Origin: Guillardia theta CCMP2712
Lineage: Eukaryota; Protista; Cryptophyta
DNA: 64,000 bases
Reading direction: 5' to 3'
Assembly: GCF_000315625.1 (NCBI RefSeq)
Contig: NW_005434595.1
Span: 106,442-170,441, forward strand
Below the pieces are notes generated by a model, which saw only the letters and a program-made list of their open reading frames with translations, was not told the origin of the DNA and searched no databases. A program made the translations under genes and the position numbers. Positions 6,839 through 49,264 of this stretch are shown one piece after another (positions within the stretch are counted from its first letter, which is position 1; each line of letters begins with the position of its first letter).

Positions 6839-8213
6839 AAGGGGCAGGAAAGATCGTGCTATCTGCTAAACTTGGGATTTTACCGGTGGCGATTGTGATA
6901 AGACAAAGACAGCTTTGTTGACAAACTTGTATTGTTGTTTGCTTCTGCAGATGCTCTTGAAGGGAGGCTCAGTACTGTCTCTGCAGTTTCCCGCTACAAA
7001 CATGAATGGTTTGTTTATCTTCATCTACAAACCCCGGTGATCTCGTTCGCAGACAAGAGTGAATCACCTTTCGTGTTTGTGTGCGCTCCGGACGAGGTGA
7101 GGAAAGAGAATATGAATGTTGAGAACAAGAATAATCCCTTGCGCTGTTTTGACTTGTCGAAAGTTGCCTTTGTCGCTCAATTTTGTCAAAATTATGATTC
7201 TTTTGCTCTTGATTTCTTGATTGTACCTGCAAGTCATTGTTCTTGCGCTCATCAAGAATTTCTCTTCTTTTCATGGAAATATTTTTTGTTGTGCGCATGC
7301 GTGATTGTGGGCAGGCAGGGAAGGGGGCTGGAGACCTTTACCTGGACGATGGGAAGTCACAGAAGAATGTTTTGAACGGTAAAGAGAGGAGAGGAGAGGA
7401 GAGGAGAAGAGAGGGGAGGAGAGGAGAAGAGAGGGGAGGAGAGAATGAGGAGAAGACAGGAAGAATACGAAAACGAGGAAAGAGAAGTGAATACAAAAAC
7501 AAGACAATCAGGATAAGAAATTGAGGAACAAGAAACCAGCACGAGGATACAACATGACTTCTTCTGATGTTTTCTCTCTGACAGGAAGGTTCAACTTGTT
7601 GCGATCAAACTGTTTTGTCGACGGGAAGAATCAGTTGGGAAACTTTACATTGCAATCTCTTAAGAGAGACAGTGCCTCTCAACCAGGTCCAATGAGATCA
7701 GAGATTCGTAAGGTTGATGATTGGCGATATTTGTTGTTCATGCCGTGATTTTGTTCTGTATCCTTCTTCACACAGATTGTCATCTTCGGCGCTTCTTTCC
7801 ACCATCCAGCGCAACTAGTTGTGAGAGTGAACGGGGTGAGAAAGAGCGATGTCTGTACATCTCGATTGTGATAAGTTGCTGCGCAGCATACGATGTCGAA
7901 CAAGAGAATCTACTACGAGGAGACAAGAAGCATCTTACACATAGACTTGTTTCGTGCGTCCAGTCAAGCAGGGGAGAGAGAGACCGAGGAGAGGAAAGAA
8001 GATTTGTATGTCAAGAAGCCAGAGGAGAGGGGGAGGGAGGGGAAAGAGGAGGAGAGGGGAAGGCAGGGAGACAGAAGGGTTGATACGATTGCTCCTTGGG
8101 ATTGGATGGAGCCAAGGGAGGAGAAGGGAAAGGCCGGGATGCAAGGAGAGGAGGGAGAAGGCAAGCTCGACGTTCTGAATGATCTCCATGTAGATTGGAG
8201 GATAGAGATGTGA
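2676..8213 (+). CDS. Secreted GH31 alpha-glucosidase-like protein with 3 EGF/EGF-Ca domains and a trefoil (P-type) domain; catalytic motifs degenerate
   Basis: Signal peptide; EGF Cys patterns (CENINEC, DVDEC...CHNVPGSFTCTC); trefoil CVHRGCCW...PCYY; GH31 landmarks PPLWSLG, YLDFFNP, HYSLHNLY, RPLILSRS, GGDVC, RYSLTSYIYT...GVPVIRPLHMEF, GDLYLDDGKS, C-terminal DWRIEM. Confidence 0.85.
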
Positions 8214-8400
8214 GAAGGATCGATATGATGTGAAAGATGTAAAGATAACAAGGTGTTGTGACTTTTCTCAATGAATTTGTCATGAATATGCTAGTTTACA
8301 TGTCCTCCTTCCCTCCTTTCTCCTCTCCACCCTGAAGTTTCTCTCCCTCCCCTCTTTTTCTGCTTCTTCCCTCCTCCCCCTCTCCTCCCTCGCTGCTGCT

Positions 8401-8540
8401 TCAGCCCTTGTGGGAGGTCAGTGGACGACGAGCGGGGGATGTGAATTGAGGGCGCGAAATGACGCGAGCGGTGAAGGGGCGAGGAGACTGAAAGCTTGAA
8501 AGACTGCGCCAGAGTGAGAAACGGTCATGATGATGATGAC

Positions 8541-8578
<38 letters not shown>

Positions 8579-8609
8579 CGATGATGATGATGACGATGAT
8601 GATGATGAC

Positions 8610-8691
<82 letters not shown>

Positions 8692-8812
8692 AGAGAGNNN
8701 NNNNNNNNNNNNNNNNNNNNNNNNNNNNNNNNNNNNNNNNNNNNNNNNNNNNNNNNNNNNNNNNNNNNNNNNNNNNNNNNNNNNNNNNNNNNNNNNNGAG
8801 AGAGAGAGGAGG

Positions 8813-8848
<36 letters not shown>

Positions 8849-11800
8849 GAGGAGGAGGAAGAGAAGGAGCAGGAGGAGCAGGAGGAAAGGGTTCAAACTC
8901 ACGAGGCTGAGGATGGGCAGAAGGTGCTCCTTAGCTTGGAGAGGTTGAGCTGAGCGAGACTGAAGGAAGCGTCGGGAGAGGAGGAGAACGCTTCTGCTCC
9001 TTCTCGTTCTTCTGCTGAGTCTGAGAATCTAGAGGGAGCATGCTCAGCTGATCCCAAACATGAAGAGGGATAGAAGAAGAAAATGGGAGGGGGAGGAGGA
9101 GGAGAAAGAAGAGCGACGAGAAGAATAATGAAGAGGAATCAGCAGGAGGGGCGAGCAGAAGAAAGAGCAGGAGCGGGAAGACAGGGCAGGGAGGGGAAGC
9201 AAGGAGCAGGGAGCAGGGAGCAGGGAGCAGGGAGCAGGGAGCAGGGAGCAGGGAGCAGGGAGCAGGGAGCAGGGAGCAGGGAGCAGGGAGCAGGGAGCAG
9301 GGAGCAGGGAGCAGGGAGCAGGAGCGAGAGGAGGGAGAGGGCTGAAGAAGCAGCGTGTATGCCTGAGGTCGGGGGTGAGGATGGAATCAAGATTGAGAGC
9401 GCGGGGGATGCTCGTCCTGCTCATCCTCGACCACTTGGGAGTGACTGAAGCAGAAATAGGACGAGACTGAGAAGAATGTCAGAGGAGGAGGAGGAGCGAG
9501 CAGGAGGAGCAGGAGGAAGGAAAGAAATGAGGAGGAGGGGGGTGGGAGGAAGCGAAGAATGGGGAGAGGGGAGGGGAAGAAGAAAGAGGGAGGCGGAGAG
9601 GGAGGGGAGAAGAGGAGGAGGGAGTACACGACAGACGAGGGCGGGAAAGAGGGAGAGAGGTGCGGAGGGACGAGGGAGACAAGAGAGGAGAGGAGAGGAG
9701 AGGAGGAGGAGGAGGAGGAGAAGGAGGACAGGGTCACCTTGGAGGATGGAGCTGGAGTATGAGCAGAGGAACTTGCTCCGACGGGGAGGAGAAGTTTCTC
9801 AGAGGACAGAGGTGCACGGATAGGACCACTTGAAGATGCTCTAGGACGAGGAGGGGGAGAGGAGAAGTCGAGGGGAGGAGAGTGAGGAGGAGGAGGAGGG
9901 CACAACCAGCCTTCGTTCAAGCTCGGAACCACCTTGATGACTTCATCGAAGAGGAAGGGGATTTCTTCCTGCTCGTGCTCCCTCCTGGCCTTGATGCTTC
10001 CTGACGCGCTCGCGTCTACAACGTTGCCGGTGGATGAGAAGATGCGATCGATGTCAGAGATGATGTCTTGTTTCATGAGATGCTGTTTGAGATCTTCTCT
10101 GTTCATCTCAACACTCCCCGGTGATGTTTCTTTGTTGTCGTCCTTTGTGGTTTCATTTTTGTCCTCCATCATAACAAACTCGTTGAGAGTTTTCTCCACG
10201 TGGAGCTTGTGCGATGAGAGAGAGAAGCTAGAGGGCTGTTCTTTCCTCCATATCCTGTCAAGATCTTCCTTCTCATCGATGAAAATGTTTGCTCTTTGAG
10301 TTTGTGTCGACGTCGACGTCATAGTTCTTCGAATTTCTTCCCTCAACATGCACTTCTCGCAAACATGATGGTGATGGTGGTGATGTTGATGATGATTGAT
10401 GTTGTTGTTGTTGACTTGATATTCCTCCGAGTCTGTCTCATCGGAATCGGAGCTCAACGTGTCAACTTCGTTCACTTGTACATCCTTGTCAGCAGTGGAA
10501 GGAGTAACAAAGAGGTTTGGGTCGTCAACAAACAGTGACGCGCCTTGTATGAAACCTGTTATGTGTTGTTCGTTGAGAGAATTCTTGGAGCTATCCATTT
10601 CTTTTATCTTTTTCTTGATGTCTTCAACAGCAATCTTCCTGTTGTTCTTGTTCTTTTCCATAACTTCCATTGCAAACTTTGCGCCTTCACGGAAAGCAAG
10701 TTTGAACATGACCAACTTTCTTTCTGCTGCCTCCTGTGACTTCTTCTCGCCATGGACCAGCCCTTGACGGAAGAAATCATACCTGATCGCGTTCGCCTGC
10801 TCAGTTGAGAGCGCAAGGGCAGCATTCATCTTCTTGATTTCTTGCTCGAACGTCATCATGTCTTGCAGAGTGTTCTTGTAGTTCTCTCTTCTCGTAACCA
10901 TTCTCGATGATGATTGCAACTTTGCAGCAGCTGCACTCTTCTGCTCGTGCTGACGTCGCAAAGTTTCATAGGCGTGTCTGAACAACGTTCTGTTCCGCTT
11001 GTCCACTTTCATCAAGTTTGCACAACCTTGTAAGAAGCTTGCGAGAGAGACATTTCCATCTTGATTGCATATCTCGATCATCAGCAACTCAACTAGCTGA
11101 AATTGCATCCCGGCAGTGAGCAGATCGTCTTTTACCAATGATTGCGATAGAGAATGCTTCCCTCCAATGTTGATCATCCTGAACATTGCACTCAACATCT
11201 CTTCATGTTCTTCCATCTTGAAGTCGTCTTCAACCTTCAACCTCACTGTTGTGATATTGTGTTTCATCTTTTCGATCAGCATCCGTAAATCTGTTTCCTC
11301 CCTGATATCTTCAAACCTTACACGATTGTCGTAAGTCAACGCGTTCTTCCCTATCCTTGTGAACTTCCAAGAGCTGTTCGGAGAAGATAACATGCATATG
11401 ACTTGTAGAACAACATTCAAAATGTCAATCGCTCTAAGATAATCGTCATGAAAGTTTTCTCACCGATGGGTTTACAAACTATCTTGGTTGCGATCTCAAA
11501 CTCCATTGAGCACACTGAGGAAGAACAGTATTCGTCGCTCATGAAAATCAGAATCACTTGGCTGTGCGACATGGCCTGTAGAGCATGATCAACAAGGAGA
11601 GGAAAATCACACAACAGCGAGAAACATGATGACGAAAGATCAAGAATGAAAAGTTCAAGTTCTGCAACAGCATTCAACATGGGACAACCTGCAAGATATT
11701 GTGAAACTTGTCAACATGGACATTCTTGTTCTGTGCATGCGAGGCAAGACAGCACTTCTTCGTCTCAAACTCGCTGATCCACGGACTCTCTTCCAGTATC

Positions 11801-40395: not shown

Positions 40396-42029
40396 TTATT
40401 GCTTCTTCATGAACCGCTTGACTCTCTTGTATCGATTTGACTGCTCAAGCAAGATGAGTGCGCGGCAGCGGGGAGTTTCAACGAGCGTAGGATCGTTGTC
40501 CATGAGTCCTACCTGCATGAACTCACGGCGCTTCTCCTCGTCCGCCTCCATCTGCTGCTGTTGCCATTCCTCGAGCTTCTCTTGATTCCAGAGTTGCAAC
40601 TCAAGGAACTGCAATTGATTCAGAGTGAGAACTTGATCATAATGACGCAACTGGCGACCTCCTGTCTTTCTTCATCCGGCAAGCTCACCCACACATCCTC
40701 TCGCATTCTAAGAATCTGTCGAGTGATGTATTCGTGTTCTTGAGCTCCATACTGCACAAGTTTGTGTAGATTGTAAGTTCGAACTCAAACCCTCAACTGT
40801 GAAAGAACCTCTTTGCCCAGAATTCTGAACATGAGAATCCAGCGGATATTGAACCATAGAGAATGAAGCTGCAATGTATCATAAGAAGCTACAGAGAACA
40901 TCAAACGATGAACGACAATATCCAAAGGAAGAACAATGATTCTGACGACGAGGACATCAAAGTATCTGTAACAACAGGAGGTCAGCGATGATCGCATCTT
41001 GCCCTTTAGCTCACGTGACTGGTTCACTAAGCTTTATTCCATTCACTGCCGTTCGCTCCAACACTTCCATCTCAGCCTAATTCAATGTCATGTGACGAAA
41101 CTGAAACACACTCGCCGAACCTTCTTCTCGATCTCTTTGAACTTGGCATGATCCTTGGCTGAAATACTCAAGTTATCTCACCAGCATGGCAGCAATATCA
41201 AAGTTCAGACGTTTCTTCAGATTCAAACTTCCCGACCCCAATTCTTGCATTCGATTCTTCACAAAGGCCTAAAGATATATCAGACACAATGGGTCTGACA
41301 GCTGTAGATTGCTGGACCTGAGTCTTGCTTTGACTTAGAATCATCTGAATGAGTCTGCTTCGCCTCGAATACGCTATGCTGTATTGGAGGATCGAAAGCA
41401 ACAACAAAATCCCCAGAATAACTAAACGAACATCCGACTTGGGAGCGTAGTATGCCTTAGCAAAAGGTCACGACCTGCCTCGGTGGAGTTGGGATCAACA
41501 CCTGATAGTAGTTGCTGTAATGCTCCCACAAATGGCGCTCTGGATGAGCCAGGAAATCATCATAAGCTTTTCTCACATCCTCGTTCTTCAGGACCTGTTC
41601 AACTCAAATCAGCACAAAGTCGACAGCCCGTGCACAATGACCTCATACGCACTGCCGATTTCAATGAATCTTTCCTGAGCATTAGGCTCATCGCTCTTAT
41701 CAGGGTGAAATTGCAGCGAAAGCCTAGCAGAATAGTTTCAGGGAAGGATCCTACAACATTTCTAATCCTGCTCCTTGCCTGCGATATGCCTTCTTTATGT
41801 CTGCACTCGTACAGTCTTGCTCCAGCTCCAAAACATCATAACATGATTTCGTCTTGCAGTATATATTCATCCCTTCTGGAAATCGATCCTTGGCCCTGCC
41901 ATCAACCACCTTGCCATGACAATCAGTTAAGTTGCAACCCAATCGGCAAGAATCAGAGCTCACCTTCACAAGGAACGTGGTGACGACCAAAAGGATCGCA
42001 GCTATCCTAACGTGAACCAGCGAAGGCAT
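40396..42029 (-). CDS. DNAJC25: ER membrane J-domain protein, DNAJC25-like (multi-exon)
   Basis: Signal peptide, NIYC...CYDVL...IKKAYRR, LSLQFHPDK, TM segments, C-terminal LWNQEKLEEW...RYKRVKRFMKK. Confidence 0.85.
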
Positions 42030-42700: not shown

Positions 42701-43429
42701 TATTCAAAATATTTTGAATTGACTTTATTTTATTTGATTTTGAAATACTAATATATTAGTTATCTTGTATACTATATGAAAATAAAGTCAAATAGATGCT
42801 CCTCGGTGAAGTTTCTTGGCAAAGGGCACCGCTCTGCGGCACACAAGTACTCTTTGCAAAAGCGCGCGCATGCTAGCAAGGTAAAACATTCATGCATGAG
42901 CGTCGAGTTTCATGGGCAGGGAGTGGAGATAAGTCAAGAAGAGTTGAGGGAAAGAGCAAGGAACAATGTTCTCTCCTCGTTATCCTGTGATCTTCTCTTC
43001 CTAGATATCGGTTTCTTGTCTTCCCACTCGTTGTCTATCGCCGTGTTTTTGCCTATTTAGACCCTAATCTCGTGTTTATTGCTATCTTTGTCTACCTTTC
43101 AGTCGGATTTTCTTAGCGATGTTTACTTCGTTGCTATCATATGTTGGAATCCAACTCTGTCGTGCTGCACTCACCTAGTCTTCATGTCAATGTTGGATTC
43201 TTGGTGGGCATTCCTTCATAAAGTGAAAATCAGGATGTTGCCTTATGTTGCCTGGTTCCCTTGCAAACTTCCTGCCCTGAATCTACCATTGAAGGCTTGA
43301 AGTCTTTGTTTTGCCAATTTTTACTAGTTTTCATGAACTTTTTGTTCGATCTGATGTAGCATCTTGTGCAGGTGAAGGGTTCGAGGCAACTTAATCTGAT
43401 TGATCTGCTGTGATTGGTTTCGAATTGAG

Positions 43430-46093
43430 ATGGTCAAAACTCGAGGGTGGAGATTTCTTTCACTTTGTCTTTTGATTGCCCTCGTTGTCTTGTCGAATCA
43501 TGCAATCGCGGATTCCTTGGATCAGTCCGAGAACCAAGACGAAGGCGATGGAGAGCACGCAGATGGTAGCGAGGCATCCGGCACAAACAATAATCGGAAC
43601 TTGCAGGATGACGACCATTTGAAAGAGAAAATAAGGGCTGCATTTGACTCCAGCAAATCACCGAGCAATGTACAACCCTCTGCAGGTCTCGTTTTCCGAT
43701 GCATCGATTGCTCGATTCTGACTAGTGACTAGATGGCACGAATGGGGAATCTCACAATTCTCAACAAGCATCTCCAGGCTCAGGTCATGTAGCACAAGAA
43801 CAAGCAAGCTCTGGGAACACTGTTTCCGGAGAACAAGCGCAGAAGTCAAGTCACGGTTGATAAATTTCTGAAGAGGGGAATTCCACTTATGCGTTTCCTT
43901 GTGTTCAGACACAGTCCCCGAAGGATATGGTCTTTCGGTGCATGAATCCTCATCTATATGTCCAAATCAGCAAATTACAGTGTCTTGGATTGCACCTGCT
44001 AGTCGTCATGAGGTATTTCGCGATGGATTTTGATGTTGGCGTCATGAATAATCGTTTCATTAGAATGATTTCTTGGCGATCTTTCCCAAGGGCTCAAACA
44101 CGTACACCTTAAAACAAGAATTGGGGAGTCCAGGGCAACGAGAGGGCACATTAAAGTTTCATGGAGTGGGCACTACATCCAATCTTCTCTCTCCTGGAAG
44201 GTAATGCTTTCACACACCGTTTTTGGGATACTGATGTATTCTTTCTTGGTTGTTCATCGTCGATTCTGCAGCTATGAAGTTCGCTACATAGATTCAGCTA
44301 CTCAACAATCAAGGCAAACCAAAGACTTTGTTGTTCAAAGCTGTGTGGGAGGAAGTGGTGCTGCTAATTCCGCTCAGTCGACGGGTGCAGCAATCAACAC
44401 GGCTCAACCCTCTTCATTGGAGAACCCAAACAGAATGTCAATTGCTTCTGGACAGTCTTTCTCACCAAACATGAATTCTCCATCTGCTTTGCGAACCTCA
44501 GGGGCTTCGGCGTCGAACCTGCAGGGGAGTGTGGATCGTGCAGCAGTGGACGCTCAGAACCCCTCAGCAAGCAATGTCAACGCAGGGGCAAGCATGCCGC
44601 AGGCAGCAGGGACGGCGACGGGAGTGCAAGCGCAGGGAGGGATGCAAGCTCAGGGTCAAGGATCCTCCTCATCGTTGCCAGTCTCCCAGAGCGGGAATGT
44701 CCAGGCGGCAAGCACAGTGCAGACCCAGGCAGCAAGCGCAGTACAGACCCAGGCAGCAAGCAACGTCAACGCAGGGGCAAGCATGCCGCAGGCAGCAGGG
44801 ACGGCGACGGGAGTGCAAGCGCAGGGAGGGATGCAAGCTCAGGGTCAAGGATCCTCCTCATCGTTGCCAGTCTCCCAGAGCGGGAATGTCCAGGCGGCAA
44901 GCACAGTGCAGACCCAGGCAGCAAGCGCAGTACAGACCCAGGCAGCAAGCAACGTCAACGCAGGGGCAAGCATGCCGCAGGCAGCAGGGACGGCGACGGG
45001 AGTGCAAGCGCAGGGAGGGATGCAAGCTCAGGGTCTCAACGATGGAGTGTCGCGAGCGAGCTCTCTGAATGGTGACCAAGCTCGTGGAGTGAGTAAACGT
45101 TTTCTGTTACGTGATTCTTGCTTGGACTTGTTGGATTCTCTATCCCCTTCATCAATGGTGTGTAACTGATTTCCTTTCGTTCAGACCAATGACGAAAATC
45201 CCTATGCAATGGAAGGGAAGCACATACATTCAACTCAGCGGTCCCTGAGCAGTGGAGAATACATGCTCTCTGTCCCGTCAAGTGTTGCAGGTATTTAATG
45301 TTTGTATTCCAGCTCAGAGGCTTCAACTTATTTTTTTTTTACCAGATCCTTCGAAAGCCAGCAATGTTGGATCAGGTCTGAACCACATGATCTGAATGGT
45401 ATATGTAACAGATTTGTATAGCAGATAATGCAGCTCAAAAGCAGCAATTGAACCAAATGGGGCAGCTTCCACAGCAGCCTCCACAGCAACAGCAGCTTCT
45501 ACAGCAGCTTCCACTGGGGCAGCAGGGGCAGCAGGGGCAACAGGGGCAGCAGCAGCTTCTACAGCAGCTTCCACAGCAACAGCAGCTTCCACAGCAACAG
45601 CAGCAGGCTCCACAGCAGCAGCAGCAGCAGCAGGCTCCACAGCAGCAGCAGCAGCAGCAGGCTCCACAGCAGCAGCAGCAGCAGGCTCCACAGCAGCAGC
45701 AGCAGGCTCCACAGCAGCAGCAGCAGCAGGCTCCACAGCAGCAGCAGCAGGCTCCACAGCAGCAGCAGCAGCAGGCTCCACAGCAGCAGCAGCAGCAGGC
45801 TCCACAGCAGCAGCAGCAGGCTCCCGAAGGCCAGAAGCAAGCAGAAGGCCAGCAGCAAGCAGCAGGCCAGCAGCAGGCCGTGCAAGGGCAGCAGCAGCAA
45901 CAACAACAACAGCAGCAGCAGCAGGCCGTGCAAGGGCAGCAGCAGCAACAACAGCAGGCTCCCGAAGGCCAGAAGCAAGTAGAAGGCCAGAAGCAAGCAG
46001 ACGGCCAGAAGCAAGCAGAAGGCCAGCAACAGGTCGTGCAGGGTCAGCAGCAGCTTCCACAGCAGCAGCAGCAGCAAGCCACGGCAGGGCAAG

Positions 46094-46126
<33 letters not shown>

Positions 46127-49100
46127 CTCCCGAAGCCCAGAAGCAAGCAGATGGCCAGCAGCAGGCCGTGCAAGGGCAGCAGCAGCAGCAGCAGCAGCAA
46201 CAGCAACAGCAGCAGGCCGTGCAAGGGCAGCAAGTGCAGCAGCAGGCTCCCGAAGGCCAGAAGCAAGTAGAAGTCCAGCAACAGGTCGTGCAGGGTCAGC
46301 AGCAGCTTCCACAGCAGCAGGCTGCGCCAGGGCAAGGGCAGCAGGCCACGACAGGGCAAGGGCAGCAGGCCGCGCAAGGGCAAGGGCAGCAGCAGCAGCA
46401 GCAGGCTCCCGAAGCCCAGAAGCAAGCAGATGGCCAGAAGCAAGCAGAAGGTCAGAAGCAAGCAGAAGGTCAGAAGCAAGCAGAAAGTCAGAAGCAAGCA
46501 GATGGCCAGCAGCAGGCCGTGCAAGCACAGCAGACAAGTGAAAAGCAACAATCAAGCGGCTCAGGTTCTCAAGAAACTTCGAAGAATGGCGACAATTCTC
46601 AGCAATCTGTTGAACAATCCACGCAAAAAAAGGTCGACGCTCAAGAACAAGACAAGAAACAATCTACCGATCGTTCTGAATCGGCTGATGCAAAGAACAA
46701 TCAGCAAAACCAGCAAGATGTGAAGTCTGAAGGTTCAAAGGATAAGGAGGGTGCAAGTGCCAAAGCTCAAGGCGATCAAACTTCAACCAATACAAAGATT
46801 GATCCAAATGTAAATCAAGACTCCAAGAAAGGTAATCATCTTGAATTTGCCTATAGTGTTGAAGGGAGCGATAGAGATTGGATTTCTCTTGTTTGTTTGC
46901 ATCGCCTTATATTTGATAGACAAAGATTTTGACGATGTTGCTTTGTTTTTCCTTGATCAGGCGAAGACGATGCATCGAAAGGGAAATCTGCCGAAAAGGA
47001 TATCAAGGCTGATCAGCAGAAGAATCAGAGCTCCGCAGAAAAATCGAATGCCAAGGGACCGGATGAGAAGAAAACGCAACTCGGAAGCGGAGACAAGAGC
47101 AATAGCGATTCTGTGTCGAAATCGGACAAGCAAGAATCCAAAGACAGCTCAAAAACTGGCTCCTCTGGAGGCTGGTTTGGATGGCTTGGCTCTGGAGGTA
47201 GTAAGGACGAATCTGGCACCAAAAAGAGCACTGATAGTGCAGAATCGACCAAGGACGGAACAGAATCGAAGGCGGGTAAGGATGAGGGCAAGACAGAGAA
47301 AGTTGGCACAACTGATGGCAAATCTGATAAGCAAGCTGCAAACACTGACGTGCAAGGCAAAAGCAGTGAAGGAAAAGACCAGACAGCCCAAAGTAAGGAC
47401 TCAATGTCAAGCAAAGATTCGAAGCCAAGTAACGATATAAGTGAGAAATCCGAGGGAGGACCGAAAGCTTCAAATGATCAAGCGATGGCTGCAAAAGATT
47501 CCAGCACAAAGTCGAGCGCGGATAAGAAAAATGATGATAGCGAACAGTGGGGAGGAGATCGTAAGCAGGAGAAAAGTGCTTCAGGCTCAAGCACCCAATC
47601 GCAGAACGACAAGAGCAGTGTTGTTTCACAAGGGCAAAGCGAATCAAGCAGTAAGTCGGAACAAAACGTTGAGGGAAGCAGAAAGTCGAGTGAAGGTTCG
47701 CGCGATGAAATGGGCAAGAGCTCACAATCCTCCAGCTCAGACCGTACAAACTCCAAGTCTTCATCAGGAAGAGATGGCAGCTCGAAAAGCTCCAAACGTG
47801 ATGAAGATGACGAAGATGCGACTGTCATTAGGAAGAAGATCAATGGAGGCTGGTTCTCGTTGGCAGCAATCGCTGGCAATGGGACTGGAATGATAGTTGG
47901 GATCTCTGGCGTCGCTGTCATCATCCTAGCAGTAGGGGCCTTTGTAAGTCTGTTGCTCACCATCCAATCGTTTGACCAGCCTCTCCCACAGGTTGTAAGG
48001 AGAAGGCTGAGCGGGTCCAGCAAGGTACAGTCGAGAGGAAACTTTCGGTGGGTCTGACTCGTGCTGTGCTGGCGTCCTGGTGGTTCACAGGGGAGCTACT
48101 ACTCTATCGAGATGGGGGAAGGGGACCTCGAATCCGGGCAGGGGGTGCTCAATGAGGAGTTCAAATCGTTTGCCAAGGTTTCGAACTCTGTACGTTGATG
48201 CTGTTGTAGAGATCAGTTGGAGATTGAAAATGCTTCAAAGGTGGCAGAGGTTGCTGGAAAACAAGGCAGCGATGGCTGGGGGGATGAAGACGGGTGGGAT
48301 GAGGATTTTGACAACTTCGATTCCAAGGTTCGCTCCATTGTCGAGTATAGTGGGCACTTGCAACTAATGTCGGTGTTGTCGAACAGACTACTTATCCCAC
48401 TCTGACTGCTCTGGATAAGAATGGAATCAAGGTTGAAATTGTGTTGTCGTTCATTCCTACGTTGATCACTTGTGAAGGTGTTGTTCGACTTCGAGAAATC
48501 GGATCCAGGTACGCACAAGAATCTCCAGCGCACTCGTTCTTCAATCTCCACTTCTTCACCTCTCTTCTTCGTACCTCATCTCTTCTCAACTGACTTGCTG
48601 GACCCAGACTCTTTCACCACGATCATCATGGCAACCTTCAGGAACTCCCTCCCCCACGACATGACTGAGTTCGCGTGCAAGGTCGCTGTCCCCAAACACT
48701 TGCAGGTCTGTACCCCTCCTCGTCTCTTGGCTACTCTGAGGAGCGACGCAGATTACCATGGGTCCGCCGTCGAGCACAATCTTGAGGGGCAACGGAGGGG
48801 CCATCACGCAAACCATGAACGTGACCAATGGTCAAAGAGGGTCAAAGCCACTGAAGATGCGCCTTGTGATTCAGTGAGTCACGTTGCCTTACATCGCCCA
48901 TGTTTCCTTCGCTGTTCTCCCCTTCCCTCCTGTCACGTTCCAGCCTTGCCTCTTGTTCGCTCCTGCTCCGCTCTCCCCTTCTACCCCATACTCTCCCTTC
49001 ATCTTTGTGAGACTCTTTTTCTCCGCTCACGATGGCATGCAGGTATGTACAAAATGGAGAAAAGCTCCGAGAAAGCGCGGACGTTTCGAATTTTCCAAGG

Positions 49101-49155
49101 TTTCTTGTATGCGTATGTGGATCAAGAGGTCTGACTCTCTGCCAGTGGTCTGTGA
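43430..49155 (+). CDS. Type I membrane protein: signal peptide, Ig/SKICH-like beta-sandwich, 63-aa repeats, polyQ and S/K/D-rich stalk, TM helix, sorting-motif tail and C-terminal gamma-adaptin ear (GAE) domain
   Basis: Roughly 18 exons joined in frame by GT-AG introns from ATG 43430 to TGA 49155; TM GMIVGISGVAVIILAVGAFVV followed by RRR; GAE: YPTLTALDKNGIKVLFDF...ATFRN...VAVPKHLQITMGPPSS...ITQTMNVTN...PLKMRLVIQY...VSNFPSGL. Confidence 0.8.
44572..45035 (+). repeat. 189-bp (63-aa) coding tandem repeat, about 2.4 nearly identical copies
   Basis: ASNVNAGASMPQAAGTATGVQAQGGMQAQG... repeated; the antisense ORFs 44577 and 44766 are identical and 189 bp apart. Confidence 0.95.
45460..46530 (+). repeat. 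Polyglutamine/CAG-rich coding repeat region (APQQQQQ, EGQKQA units)
   Basis: ORF 45448..46932. Confidence 0.95.
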
Positions 49156-49264
49156 GGTGAATTAGGAAGAGGACATTCGAGCATTTGACATTCCCTGTCT
49201 TTCTAACGAAATATAAACGAGCTAAAGCATTAAAGTGCTACGTCTTGTCTCCACGGGCATCAGT

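What the first reader, a model, noticed from the sequence alone, without database searches (positions are those of the whole stretch)
43430..49155. Single-pass membrane protein with its own gamma-adaptin ear (GAE) domain fused to a tail rich in ear-binding motifs
Seen in sequence: the exons 3' of the TM helix join in phase 0 as VVRRRLSGSSK | GSYYSIEMGEGDLES...FAK | LEIEN...DGWGDEDGWDEDFDNFDSK. A 59-nt intron (48328-48386, GT...CTAAT...CAG) then links in frame to five more short exons reading TTYPTLTALDKNGIKVLFDFEKSDPDSFTTIIMATFRNSLPHDMTEFACKVAVPKHLQITMGPPSSTILRGNGGAITQTMNVTNGQRGSKPLKMRLVIQYVQNGEKLRESADVSNFPSGL*. The GAE frame has no ATG of its own before an upstream TAG. The ORF track does not show this domain. 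Established: this matches the AP-1 gamma-adaptin/GGA ear fold (AVPK, ITQ, LKMRL, SNFP), which normally occurs in soluble coat adaptors and binds acidic DFxxF/PsiGxPsi motifs; YxxPhi binds adaptor mu subunits. Inference: a TGN46-like cargo or receptor (Ig-like head, about 1,000-aa Q/S-rich stalk) that carries its own adaptor appendage. It could recruit clathrin accessory proteins directly or be autoinhibited in cis by EDFDNF/WGDE. I know of no described protein with this architecture.
Basis: partly seen in the sequence, partly recalled or inferred. Interest (0 to 1): 0.85.

Follow-up and report, generated by a model that had tools for sequence, protein, structure and literature searches.

The report
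Membrane protein carrying a gamma-adaptin ear
A cryptophyte alga (Guillardia theta) makes a 1,515-residue single-pass membrane protein whose cytosolic end is a complete gamma-adaptin "ear" domain, which is otherwise known only from soluble vesicle-coat adaptors; the public annotation shows only a 175-residue fragment named "AP-1 gamma 3".

Summary
The exons 3' of the transmembrane (TM) helix splice in frame into a full GAE (gamma-adaptin ear) domain: Pfam PF02883 scores 89 bits over the whole profile, and the gamma1-adaptin ear matches at E 2e-20. An AF2 model superposes on PDB 1gyu at 1.6 A.

A 2,664-nt contig in two RNA-like runs from different studies carries every junction from the stalk exon through the TM exon to the stop, including 48327/48387. 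Raw RNA-seq reads confirm the last four junctions and a poly(A) tail near 49249.

The window is Guillardia theta CCMP2712. The public model XP_005825985.1, "Adaptor protein complex 1 subunit gamma 3", equals residues 1341-1515 of my 18-exon, 1,515-aa model, so it is a truncation starting at an internal Met.

Orthologues with the same layout (signal peptide, Ig-like domain, disordered stalk, TM, tail, GAE) exist in Hanusia phi, Teleaulax amphioxeia and environmental cryptophytes. In one of these the gene is a single intronless 799-aa ORF on a 15.9-kb genomic contig.

The ear is the best-conserved part (74-78% identity, against 36% for the luminal domain). Canonical gamma-ear motifs are absent from the tail. 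What is conserved there is a YxxPhi signal and an acidic di-Trp cluster. Function is inferred only.

The scan's own notes hold no earlier record of this feature on other DNA.

The parts
43430..49155 (+). Whole coding region: 18 exons, 1,515 codons plus stop. Exons: 43430-43685, 43733-43855, 43909-44012, 44064-44200, 44272-45088, 45185-45290, 45346-45375, 45422-46831, 46961-47943, 47992-48024, 48091-48189, 48241-48327, 48387-48431, 48478-48508, 48608-48705, 48752-48873, 49043-49099, 49146-49155.
   Evidence: Model built; all introns are GT-AG, 46-169 nt. The junctions from 46831/46961 onward are in the RNA contig. Exons 1-8 are ab initio. They are colinear with the orthologues, and their predicted share of 31-mers (0.698) matches the share held by the RNA-like runs (0.62-0.69).
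43430..43510 (+). Signal peptide, residues 1-27 (basic n-region, Leu-rich core, A-I-A before the predicted cut). An acidic stretch follows, so it does not look like a plastid transit peptide.
   Evidence: Hydropathy peak at residues 7-30; sequence. The cleavage site is read from the sequence; no predictor was run.
43855..44347 (+). Luminal Ig-like beta-sandwich domain, residues about 127-232 (exons 3-5). It holds the only two luminal cysteines, C144 and C231; equivalent cysteines are present in the orthologues.
   Evidence: 36% identity to Teleaulax P0024 residues 49-158 (E 4e-15) and to P0023 (E 3e-10). Alignment A3. AF2 of the orthologue domain gives 8 strands, pLDDT 72, pTM 0.70. Foldseek and Atlas give generic MG2 / fn3 / SKICH-like sandwiches at TM about 0.5-0.6. 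No Pfam hit.
44348..47853 (+). Disordered low-complexity stalk, residues 233-1292 (27% Q, 13% S, 11% A, 10% G, 7% K). It includes a 189-nt tandem repeat at 44565-45035 (2.5 copies, 99% matches) and CAG/Q-rich arrays at 45462-46514.
   Evidence: Composition; tandem repeats. The stalk cannot be aligned between genera, and its length varies from about 250 to 1,060 aa.
47851..47997 (+). Transmembrane helix, residues about 1292-1324, split by the 48-nt intron 47944-47991. It is followed by the RRR stop-transfer residues.
   Evidence: Hydropathy peak at 1297-1330, mean Kyte-Doolittle score 2.8. 100% identical in Hanusia. Junction 47943/47992 is in the RNA contigs.
47992..48327 (+). Cytosolic tail, residues 1323-1395 (net charge -8). 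It contains YYSI (48097-48108) and the acidic di-Trp/Phe cluster (48271-48321). Met1341 (48112-48114) is where the public 175-aa model starts.
   Evidence: Motif scan across four species. P0013 equals model residues 1341-1515. AF2 predicts the tail disordered.
48190..48240 (+). The true intron 11 (51 nt).
   Evidence: Joint 48189/48241 in the contigs of X1 and X2. The public protein P0013 uses the same junction.
48328..48386 (+). The 59-nt intron that links the tail exon to the first GAE exon. This is the junction the finding depends on.
   Evidence: Joint 48325/48385 with 'cut +2', which equals 48327/48387, GT..AG, in the contigs of X1 and X2; absent from DNA run X13.
48387..49152 (+). GAE (gamma-adaptin ear) domain, residues 1396-1515, in six exons. 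Groove residues include AVPK (48685-48696) and LKMRLV (48851-48868).
   Evidence: Pfam PF02883 at 89.2 bits. PDB gamma1 ear at E 2e-20. AF2 pLDDT 80-94 with 8 strands. Foldseek to 1gyu: TM 0.88, rmsd 1.6 A, 39% identity.
49156..49249 (+). 3' UTR up to the poly(A) addition site.
   Evidence: 11 raw RNA-seq reads end at 49249 with a run of A, and nearly all reads have the first mate on +.

Best explanation
Shown: positions 43430-49155 (+) are one Guillardia theta gene of 18 exons. It encodes a 1,515-aa type I membrane protein with this layout: signal peptide, a small disulfide-capable Ig-like luminal domain, a disordered Q/S-rich stalk of about 1,060 aa, one TM helix, a 73-aa acidic cytosolic tail, and a C-terminal gamma-adaptin-type ear (GAE). 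The public 175-aa 'AP-1 gamma 3' model is its truncated 3' end. The architecture is conserved across cryptophyte genera, and the ear is the most strongly conserved part.

Inferred mechanism: the protein travels through the secretory and endosomal system. The conserved Y[YF]SI signal, 14-22 residues from the membrane, lets adaptor mu subunits sort it into clathrin/AP carriers at the TGN or endosomes. The membrane-tethered ear keeps 6 of the 7 gamma1-ear ligand-groove positions identical or conservative. It would recruit the accessory proteins that normally dock on the AP-1 gamma or GGA ear (epsinR-like, gamma-synergin-like and similar) directly to the membrane patch where this protein sits. On this reading it is a cargo or receptor with a built-in adaptor appendage that promotes or tunes coat assembly around itself. 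Whatever its luminal Ig-like domain binds would be carried along.

My confidence in the architecture is about 0.93. My confidence in the accessory-recruitment mechanism is about 0.45. The overall figure given is for the whole statement.
For: One transcript: the 2,664-nt contigs in X1 (2018) and X2 (2014, a different study) carry every GT-AG junction from exon 8/9 to the stop. Raw reads confirm the last four junctions and the poly(A) site. DNA run X13 has no joints. The 31-mer shares in the RNA-like runs (0.59-0.61 for the 3' stretch, 0.62-0.69 for the 5' stretch) match the shares predicted by the exon model (0.595 and 0.698).

GAE identity.

Public model: P0013 is identical to model residues 1341-1515.

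Orthologues with the same layout:
- Hanusia phi P0001, covering stalk, TM, tail and GAE.
- Teleaulax amphioxeia P0024, 954 aa.
- Environmental P0021, P0023 and P0032 with signal peptide, beta-domain, stalk, TM, tail and GAE.
- P0032 is an uninterrupted 799-aa ORF on a 15.9-kb multi-gene contig.

Topology: there are only two hydrophobic segments, at residues 7-30 and 1297-1330. Basic residues follow the TM helix. The only luminal cysteines are the two in the beta-domain.

Conservation, Guillardia against Teleaulax or the environmental sequences: GAE 74-78%, tail 41-44%, beta-domain 36%, stalk not alignable.

Groove residues, from the alignment to 2a7b/1gyu: A753=A, K756=K, L762=M or I, P765=P, R793=K, R795=R, K797=V or L. 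The gamma1 numbering is from my own knowledge, but it lands on the right residue type at all seven positions. L762E abolishes epsinR binding, and the motif is proposed to bind a basic patch on the ear (PMC2172650). 1gyw and 1gyv are the A753D and L762E mutants.

YxxPhi is conserved in 4 of 4 tails.
Against: - No binding, localisation or protein-level data exist.
- K797 of the basic patch is lost in every family member.
- The junctions of exons 1-8 were not seen in reads. They rest on ab initio splicing, 31-mer shares and orthologue colinearity.
- De Bruijn contigs cannot by themselves exclude an additional short transcript that starts inside exon 10 or 11.
- X1 and X2 are only guessed to be RNA by the tool. 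However, they carry spliced forms that the DNA run lacks.
- The family was found only in cryptophytes, and only with searches of limited reach.
Confidence: 0.5

Rival explanations
1. The ear has been repurposed. It either binds the protein's own tail in cis (autoinhibition, as the GGA1 hinge WNSF motif does with the GGA1 GAE domain) or binds a lineage-specific ligand. The protein would then be a regulated switch, decoy or tether rather than a general recruiter of gamma-ear accessory proteins.
For: GAE domains do bind W/F-containing acidic peptides, including an internal one: PDB 2dwx 'GGA1-GAE with the WNSF motif', 2ymt GEEWGPWV and 3zhf NPDWDFN (titles). The Guillardia and Hanusia tails contain FDNF in an acidic context, a few residues before the ear. 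K797 of the canonical basic patch is replaced in all members. The ear is much more strongly conserved than the rest of the protein, which fits a specific partner.
Against: FDNF is not conserved in Teleaulax or the environmental orthologues; they have W-x3-F instead. AF2 left the tail disordered at pLDDT 27-47 with no docked motif, though the alignment had only 7 rows. The motif lies only about 6 residues before strand 1, which may be too short a tether to reach the groove (inference).
Confidence: 0.2
2. The conserved acidic di-Trp cluster (W-x5-W, W-x3-F) is the key signal. It binds a mu-homology domain such as that of delta-COP. The protein would then cycle in the early secretory pathway or interface with COPI, with the ear playing a secondary role.
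For: The cluster is conserved in 4 of 4 tails, whereas the gamma-ear motifs are not. ELM class LIG_deltaCOP1_diTrp_1 describes tryptophan-based motifs surrounded by acidic residues that bind the delta-COP MHD (PMC7145657).
Against: This is a pattern match only. The exact ELM expression and the primary paper could not be read. Known instances are in soluble tethering and ArfGAP proteins, not in cargo tails. This reading does not explain why a gamma-type ear is the best-conserved domain.
Confidence: 0.15
3. The functional product is the short soluble 175-aa tail-plus-ear protein, as currently annotated ('AP-1 gamma 3'), made from an internal promoter or start codon. On this reading the long form is minor or non-functional.
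For: The public model starts at Met1341, and this Met is conserved (SIEM) in all orthologues. Contigs cannot exclude an internal transcription start. X20 coverage is 3'-biased and almost absent upstream.
Against: Splice junctions link the TM exon in frame to the tail exons in the same contig. The residues just upstream of Met1341 (GSY[YF]SIE), the TM helix and the luminal domain are conserved, and they sit in one ORF with the ear in three other taxa, including an intronless genomic ORF. The 3' bias of X20 fits a 3'-tag library with poly(A) reads.
Confidence: 0.07
4. Artefact: an assembly chimera, or an AP1G pseudogene fragment lying downstream of an unrelated membrane-protein gene.
For: None found.
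Against: DNA run X13 covers the region with contigs that overlap across 48115-48127. The ear ORF is intact, spliced, polyadenylated and under strong conservation. The same fusion occurs in independent assemblies of other cryptophytes.
Confidence: 0.02

Closest known systems
AP-1 gamma1-adaptin appendage (ear) domain (PDB 1gyu, 1iu1, 2a7b)
   Same: Full-length homology: E 2e-20 and 39-40% identity. Same 8-strand beta-sandwich (TM 0.88, rmsd 1.6 A). Six of seven groove positions are kept or conservative. It is closer to gamma1 than to gamma2 (E 6e-11) or to GGA ears (E 5e-8 and weaker).
   Different: In gamma-adaptin the ear hangs from a hinge on an Adaptin_N trunk of about 600 aa in a soluble heterotetramer. 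Here there is no trunk: Pfam finds only PF02883 in the full-length orthologues. The ear is tethered to a membrane-spanning protein by a 73-aa tail. The K797 equivalent is lost.
GGA proteins (VHS-GAT-hinge-GAE), including GGA1 autoregulation by its hinge WNSF motif (PDB 2dwx)
   Same: A GAE domain at the C-terminus of a non-AP protein, preceded by an unstructured acidic linker that contains aromatic motifs. This gives a precedent for a linker motif binding its own ear (title of 2dwx).
   Different: There are no VHS or GAT domains. The ear is gamma-adaptin-like rather than GGA-like. Membrane attachment is by a TM helix, not by Arf or PI4P binding.
Public annotation XP_005825985.1 / EKX39005.1 / UniProt L1IT39, 'Adaptor protein complex 1 subunit gamma 3' (Guillardia theta CCMP2712)
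   Same: Identical to residues 1341-1515 of the model, and it uses the same splice junctions in exons 11-18.
   Different: It starts at an internal Met 18 residues after the TM helix. It therefore misses the signal peptide, luminal domain, stalk, TM helix and YxxPhi signal. The name also implies an AP-1 large subunit, which this protein is not.
Type I sorting cargo or receptors with a mucin-like or disordered luminal stalk and a YxxPhi tail (TGN38/TGN46 type). This is a functional analogy, recalled from knowledge.
   Same: Signal peptide, long low-complexity luminal region, a single TM helix, and a short cytosolic tail with a YxxPhi signal close to the membrane.
   Different: No sequence homology was tested or claimed. 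No member of that class known to me carries a folded adaptor appendage in its tail.

Membership tests
GAE / Alpha_adaptinC2 domain (Pfam PF02883) | Profile match above the curated threshold over the whole domain | tested here: met
   89.2 bits against a cutoff of 27.6, profile positions 2-111 of 111. The public fragment P0013 scores 87.6 bits. Two exons hit consecutive parts of the profile separately.
GAE / Alpha_adaptinC2 domain (Pfam PF02883) | Eight-strand immunoglobulin-like beta-sandwich that superposes on solved gamma or GGA ears | tested here: met
   AF2 pLDDT 80-94 for residues 58-175 of P0013. Foldseek to 1gyu: TM 0.88, rmsd 1.6 A over 116 columns. The top 26 hits are all gamma or GGA ears.
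GAE / Alpha_adaptinC2 domain (Pfam PF02883) | Ligand groove: hydrophobic A753, L762 and P765 plus the basic patch K756, R793, R795 and K797 (gamma1 numbering) | tested here: inconclusive
   By alignment: A, M or I, P, K, K and R are retained or conservative, and K797 becomes V or L in all members. This is compatible with binding but does not prove it. The residue list is from my own knowledge, supported by the L762E and A753D entries.
GAE / Alpha_adaptinC2 domain (Pfam PF02883) | Binds PsiG[PDE][PsiLM] or [DE]FxD[FW] peptides of accessory proteins | not testable with these tools
   Needs pull-down or ITC experiments.
AP-1 gamma-adaptin large subunit (the name the public record gives) | N-terminal Adaptin_N trunk (PF01602) that assembles with the beta1, mu1 and sigma1 subunits | tested here: not met
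   Full-length orthologues P0021, P0023 and P0024 carry PF02883 only. The window's exons 3, 4, 5 and 9 give no Pfam hit. A true gamma-adaptin (P0026, Adaptin_N plus GAE) is only 34% identical in the ear.
AP-1 gamma-adaptin large subunit (the name the public record gives) | Soluble cytosolic protein with no signal peptide or TM helix | tested here: not met
   Hydrophobic segments at residues 7-30 and 1297-1330. The TM exon is spliced in frame to the ear exons.
GGA monomeric adaptors | VHS and GAT domains N-terminal to the GAE domain | tested here: not met
   No VHS or GAT hit in any family member. The ear scores better against gamma1 than against GGA ears.
Type I membrane cargo or receptor sorted by AP complexes (a functional class) | Cleavable signal peptide, one TM helix, cytosolic C-terminus | tested here: met
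   Hydropathy. RRR follows the TM helix. The cysteine pair and the low-complexity stalk lie on the N-terminal side. This was read from the sequence; no dedicated predictor was available.
Type I membrane cargo or receptor sorted by AP complexes (a functional class) | YxxPhi signal in the cytosolic tail | tested here: met
   YYSI or YFSI, 14-22 residues after the TM helix, in 4 of 4 species. Binding to mu subunits was not tested.
delta-COP di-Trp motif carriers (ELM LIG_deltaCOP1_diTrp_1) | Acidic W-x(1-6)-[WF] motif that binds the delta-COP MHD | tested here: inconclusive
   The pattern is present and conserved in 4 of 4 tails. The class description is from PMC7145657. The exact expression was recalled from memory because the primary paper is not held. 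Binding cannot be tested here.

The most novel reading that the evidence does not exclude
Cryptophytes have a third architectural class of GAE proteins, beside gamma-adaptin and GGA: a transmembrane cargo or receptor with an adaptor appendage built into its own cytosolic tail. Part of the coat's accessory-protein hub would then be supplied by the cargo itself. This could serve a lineage-specific post-Golgi route, for example delivery to the periplast or cell surface, or to ejectisomes.
Probability: 0.4. Interest if true: 0.78.

Novelty: new variant of a known kind. Interest (0 to 1): 0.62.

Why it matters
Appendage ("ear") domains are regarded as parts of soluble coat adaptors. They act as hubs that gather accessory proteins once the adaptor is on the membrane. 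A conserved membrane protein that carries a gamma-type ear breaks that division between cargo and coat. It also offers a natural experiment on whether tethering an ear to a membrane is enough to seed or steer clathrin/AP-1-type carriers.

There are two practical consequences:
- It corrects a public gene model. The third 'AP-1 gamma' of Guillardia theta is not an AP-1 subunit, which matters for comparative counts of adaptor paralogues.
- It defines a cryptophyte family (Guillardia, Hanusia, Teleaulax and environmental relatives) with clear, testable parts: a YxxPhi signal, an acidic di-Trp cluster and an ear groove.

Tried and rejected
- The search for homologous proteins with the exon-8 ORF (region 350-461), meant to fish out a transcript-derived protein, was blank. 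The length filter excludes the full-length protein.
After that I sent it to no other tool. I worked from exact window references (exon 16) and from database proteins.
- Pfam on luminal exons 3-5 and on exon 9 gave no hits.
- the protein-atlas search, with adaptin and GGA families skipped, found no large cluster with this architecture. The only row was a generic PF02883 cluster at score 0.75.
- AF2 gave no confident contact between the tail and the ear, so cis docking is neither supported nor excluded.
- the luminal fold cannot be assigned beyond a generic Ig-like sandwich. SKICH, MG2 and fn3-like domains all match at TM about 0.5-0.6.
- four literature searches found no description of a transmembrane GAE protein.
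- the delta-COP di-Trp paper (PMC4655537) is not held.
- I first took Hanusia P0025 for a possible paralogue. I rejected that reading because it is an intron-retaining isoform of P0001.
- I made no phylogeny of the ear against cryptophyte gamma-adaptins.

Full report
**1. Observation**

Every intron is GT-AG. The frame stays open from the large exon that ends at 47943 down to TGA at 49153-49155. In the frame of exon 13 there is a TAG inside the 59-nt intron and no ATG after it.

The domain call is solid:
- Two consecutive exons, given only as window references, each hit Pfam Alpha_adaptinC2 at consecutive profile positions. Exon 48610-48705 hits 28-54 at 22 bits; exon 48752-48871 hits 56-92 at 25.4 bits.
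- Each of those exons alone pulls only gamma-adaptin ears from the PDB.
- The spliced domain scores 89.2 bits (E 2.7e-25) over the entire profile.
- It aligns end to end with the gamma1-adaptin ear at E about 2e-20. Gamma2 is weaker (6e-11) and the GGA ears weaker still (5e-8 and above).

**2. Is the ear joined to the membrane protein?**

RNA evidence:
- Runs X1 (2018) and X2 (2014, another study) each hold a 2,664-nt contig.
- That contig carries all nine junctions from 47943/47992 to 49099/49146, including the critical 48327/48387.
- It continues upstream across a further intron, 46832-46960.
- DNA run X13 covers the same stretch with no joints.
- Raw RNA-seq reads (X20, 3'-biased, first mates on +) confirm four joints (48508/48608, 48705/48752, 48873/49043 with 23 reads, and 49099/49146) and end in poly(A) at about 49249.

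The intron after '...FAK' is 48190-48240, so the protein reads ...FAKVSNS|VAEVAG... This does not change the frame.

The share of 31-mers that the RNA-like runs hold matches what the exon model predicts. For 46900-49300 the runs hold 0.59-0.61 against a predicted 0.595. For 43400-44560 they hold 0.62-0.69 against a predicted 0.698.

**3. Full gene model**

Ab initio splicing of the 5' part gives an 18-exon, 1,515-aa protein:

| Part | Residues |
|---|---|
| Signal peptide | 1-27 |
| Acidic, low-complexity stretch | 28-126 |
| Beta-rich domain | about 127-232 |
| Stalk (27% Q, 13% S), with a 189-nt tandem repeat and CAG arrays | 233-1292 |
| TM helix | about 1292-1324 |
| Acidic tail | 1323-1395 |
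| GAE domain | 1396-1515 |

Only two segments are hydrophobic enough for a membrane: residues 7-30 and 1297-1330. A signal peptide plus one TM helix followed by RRR puts the ear in the cytosol. This topology is read from the sequence; I had no dedicated predictor.

**4. Identity and relatives**

A search of 1.84 billion representative proteins with the 41-aa exon 16 (an exact window reference) returned P0001, P0002, P0003 and P0008. Cluster look-ups then showed the following:
- The window is Guillardia theta CCMP2712.
- Its public protein is XP_005825985.1 / L1IT39, 'Adaptor protein complex 1 subunit gamma 3', 175 aa (P0013).
- P0013 is identical to residues 1341-1515 of my model. The annotation therefore begins at an internal Met 18 residues after the TM helix.

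Orthologues:
- P0001 is Hanusia phi 'GAE domain-containing protein' (541 aa, 5'-partial). It runs through stalk, TM, tail and ear in one ORF.
- P0024 is Teleaulax amphioxeia (954 aa).
- P0021, P0023 and P0032 are environmental full-length proteins of 732-799 aa with signal peptide, the same beta-domain, a shorter stalk, TM, tail and ear.
- P0032 is an uninterrupted ORF on a 15.9-kb multi-gene contig. There the fusion does not depend on any splicing call.

All of these carry only PF02883. The one real gamma-adaptin retrieved (P0026, Adaptin_N plus GAE) is 34% identical in the ear.

Region by region, Guillardia against Teleaulax or the environmental sequences:

| Region | Identity |
|---|---|
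| Ear | 74-78% |
| Tail | 41-44% |
| Beta-domain | 36% (E 4e-15) |
| Stalk | not alignable |

The ear is thus the part under the strongest constraint. The match of the beta-domain also supports the ab initio 5' exons.

**5. Structure**

- AF2 of P0013, with a 7-row family alignment, folds residues 58-175 into an eight-strand sandwich at pLDDT 80-94. The tail stays disordered (pLDDT below 50).
- Foldseek puts the gamma1 ear first: 1gyu at TM 0.88, rmsd 1.6 A and 39% identity. Gamma2 and GGA ears follow, then the alpha-appendage sandwich.
- The luminal domain (AF2 pLDDT 72, pTM 0.70) is a generic Ig-like sandwich. SKICH, MG2 and fn3-like domains match at TM 0.5-0.6, which does not assign a family.
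- Its only two cysteines align with cysteines in the orthologues.

**6. What the tail and groove say**

I aligned the ear to 2a7b/1gyu, with an offset of 702 to gamma1 numbering. The offset is from my own knowledge, but it is self-consistent at all seven positions. The groove positions come out as follows:

| gamma1 position | Residue in this family |
|---|---|
| A753 | A |
| K756 | K |
| L762 | M or I |
| P765 | P |
| R793 | K |
| R795 | R |
| K797 | V or L |

L762E abolishes epsinR binding, and the [DE]FxD[FW] motif is proposed to bind the basic patch (PMC2172650).

A regular-expression scan of four tails found:
- Y[YF]SI in 4 of 4, located 14-22 residues from the membrane.
- An acidic W-x5-W plus W-x3-F cluster in 4 of 4.
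- No PsiG[PDE][PsiLM] and no [DE]FxD[FW] in any tail.
- The loose Fxx[FW] core (FDNF) only in Guillardia and Hanusia.

So 'rich in ear-binding motifs' is not borne out. The conserved cluster resembles the acidic tryptophan motifs that ELM lists for the delta-COP MHD (PMC7145657). GAE domains can also bind W-containing peptides (titles of 2ymt, 3zhf and 2dwx).

**7. Interpretation**

Shown: this is one conserved gene for a type I membrane protein with a cytosolic gamma-type ear. It is not an AP-1 subunit and not a GGA.

Inferred: it is sorted through its YxxPhi signal. Its membrane-tethered ear recruits gamma-ear ligands locally, making it a cargo or receptor with a built-in appendage.

The rivals are cis autoinhibition or a private ligand, a COPI/MHD-centred role for the di-Trp cluster, and a co-existing short soluble isoform. 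None of these is excluded. Assembly chimera and pseudogene are excluded.

**8. Novelty**

Four full-text searches found no description of a transmembrane GAE protein. The sequences are public but are either truncated and misnamed (Guillardia) or only automatically named (Hanusia).

My searches found the family only in cryptophytes. Their reach was limited to one 41-aa phmmer query and to word-indexed searches, so absence elsewhere is not shown.

An unverified scan note reports another shuffled-ear adaptor in the same genome (s1-430501). I did not test it.

I rate this a new variant of a known kind: a known domain in an undescribed, conserved architecture. It is of real interest to membrane-traffic biologists, but it has no functional data yet.

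- The typed spliced GAE was used.

Noticed in passing
window 49265-49520 (- strand): A convergent minus-strand gene overlaps the 3' end. The RNA contigs of X1 and X2 run on from 49392 to about 49513 across a gap whose ends read CT..AC on the + strand, which is a GT-AG intron on the minus strand. The 45-aa ORF at 49265-49402 (-) is a basic coiled-coil-like peptide with no significant Pfam hit. The contig therefore merges two overlapping convergent transcripts.
   Followed up: partly
window 44565-45035: A 189-nt tandem repeat (2.5 copies, 99% matches) inside exon 5 encodes 63-aa repeats of the stalk. CAG/Q-rich arrays run from 45462 to 46514. Stalk length differs about four-fold between cryptophyte orthologues.
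   Followed up: partly
window 49085 and 49095: Raw RNA-seq run X20 shows T>G at 49085 (12 of 52 reads) and C>A at 49095 (4 of 29 reads) in exon 17. The loose-end consensus sequences near 48748 and 49043 also have low agreement. This could be an allele, a strain difference or a close paralogue of the ear exons.
   Followed up: no
window 41751-42029 (- strand): The upstream neighbour on the minus strand begins with a hydrophobic signal-like segment. Its first exon ends in the start of a DnaJ domain (Pfam PF00226, 23.5 bits, profile positions 2-24).
   Followed up: partly
Hanusia phi proteins P0001 and P0025: The Hanusia orthologue has six extra residues (HPGGSQ) at the exon 10/11 junction compared with Guillardia. 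A second Hanusia transcript (P0025) retains introns, which breaks the ear.
   Followed up: partly
L002:1-13422 (ENA contig of a Teleaulax-like cryptophyte): In this genome the orthologous gene is intronless (799-aa ORF at 8001-10400), whereas Guillardia has 17 introns in its gene. GC content is 60% against 50% for the window.
   Followed up: partly
same genome, another piece (scan note s1-430501): An unverified first-reader note reports a GGA-like adaptor with an alpha-adaptin ear (VHS-GAT-UIM-hinge-alpha ear) elsewhere in this genome. If real, ear-domain shuffling may be recurrent in Guillardia.
   Followed up: no
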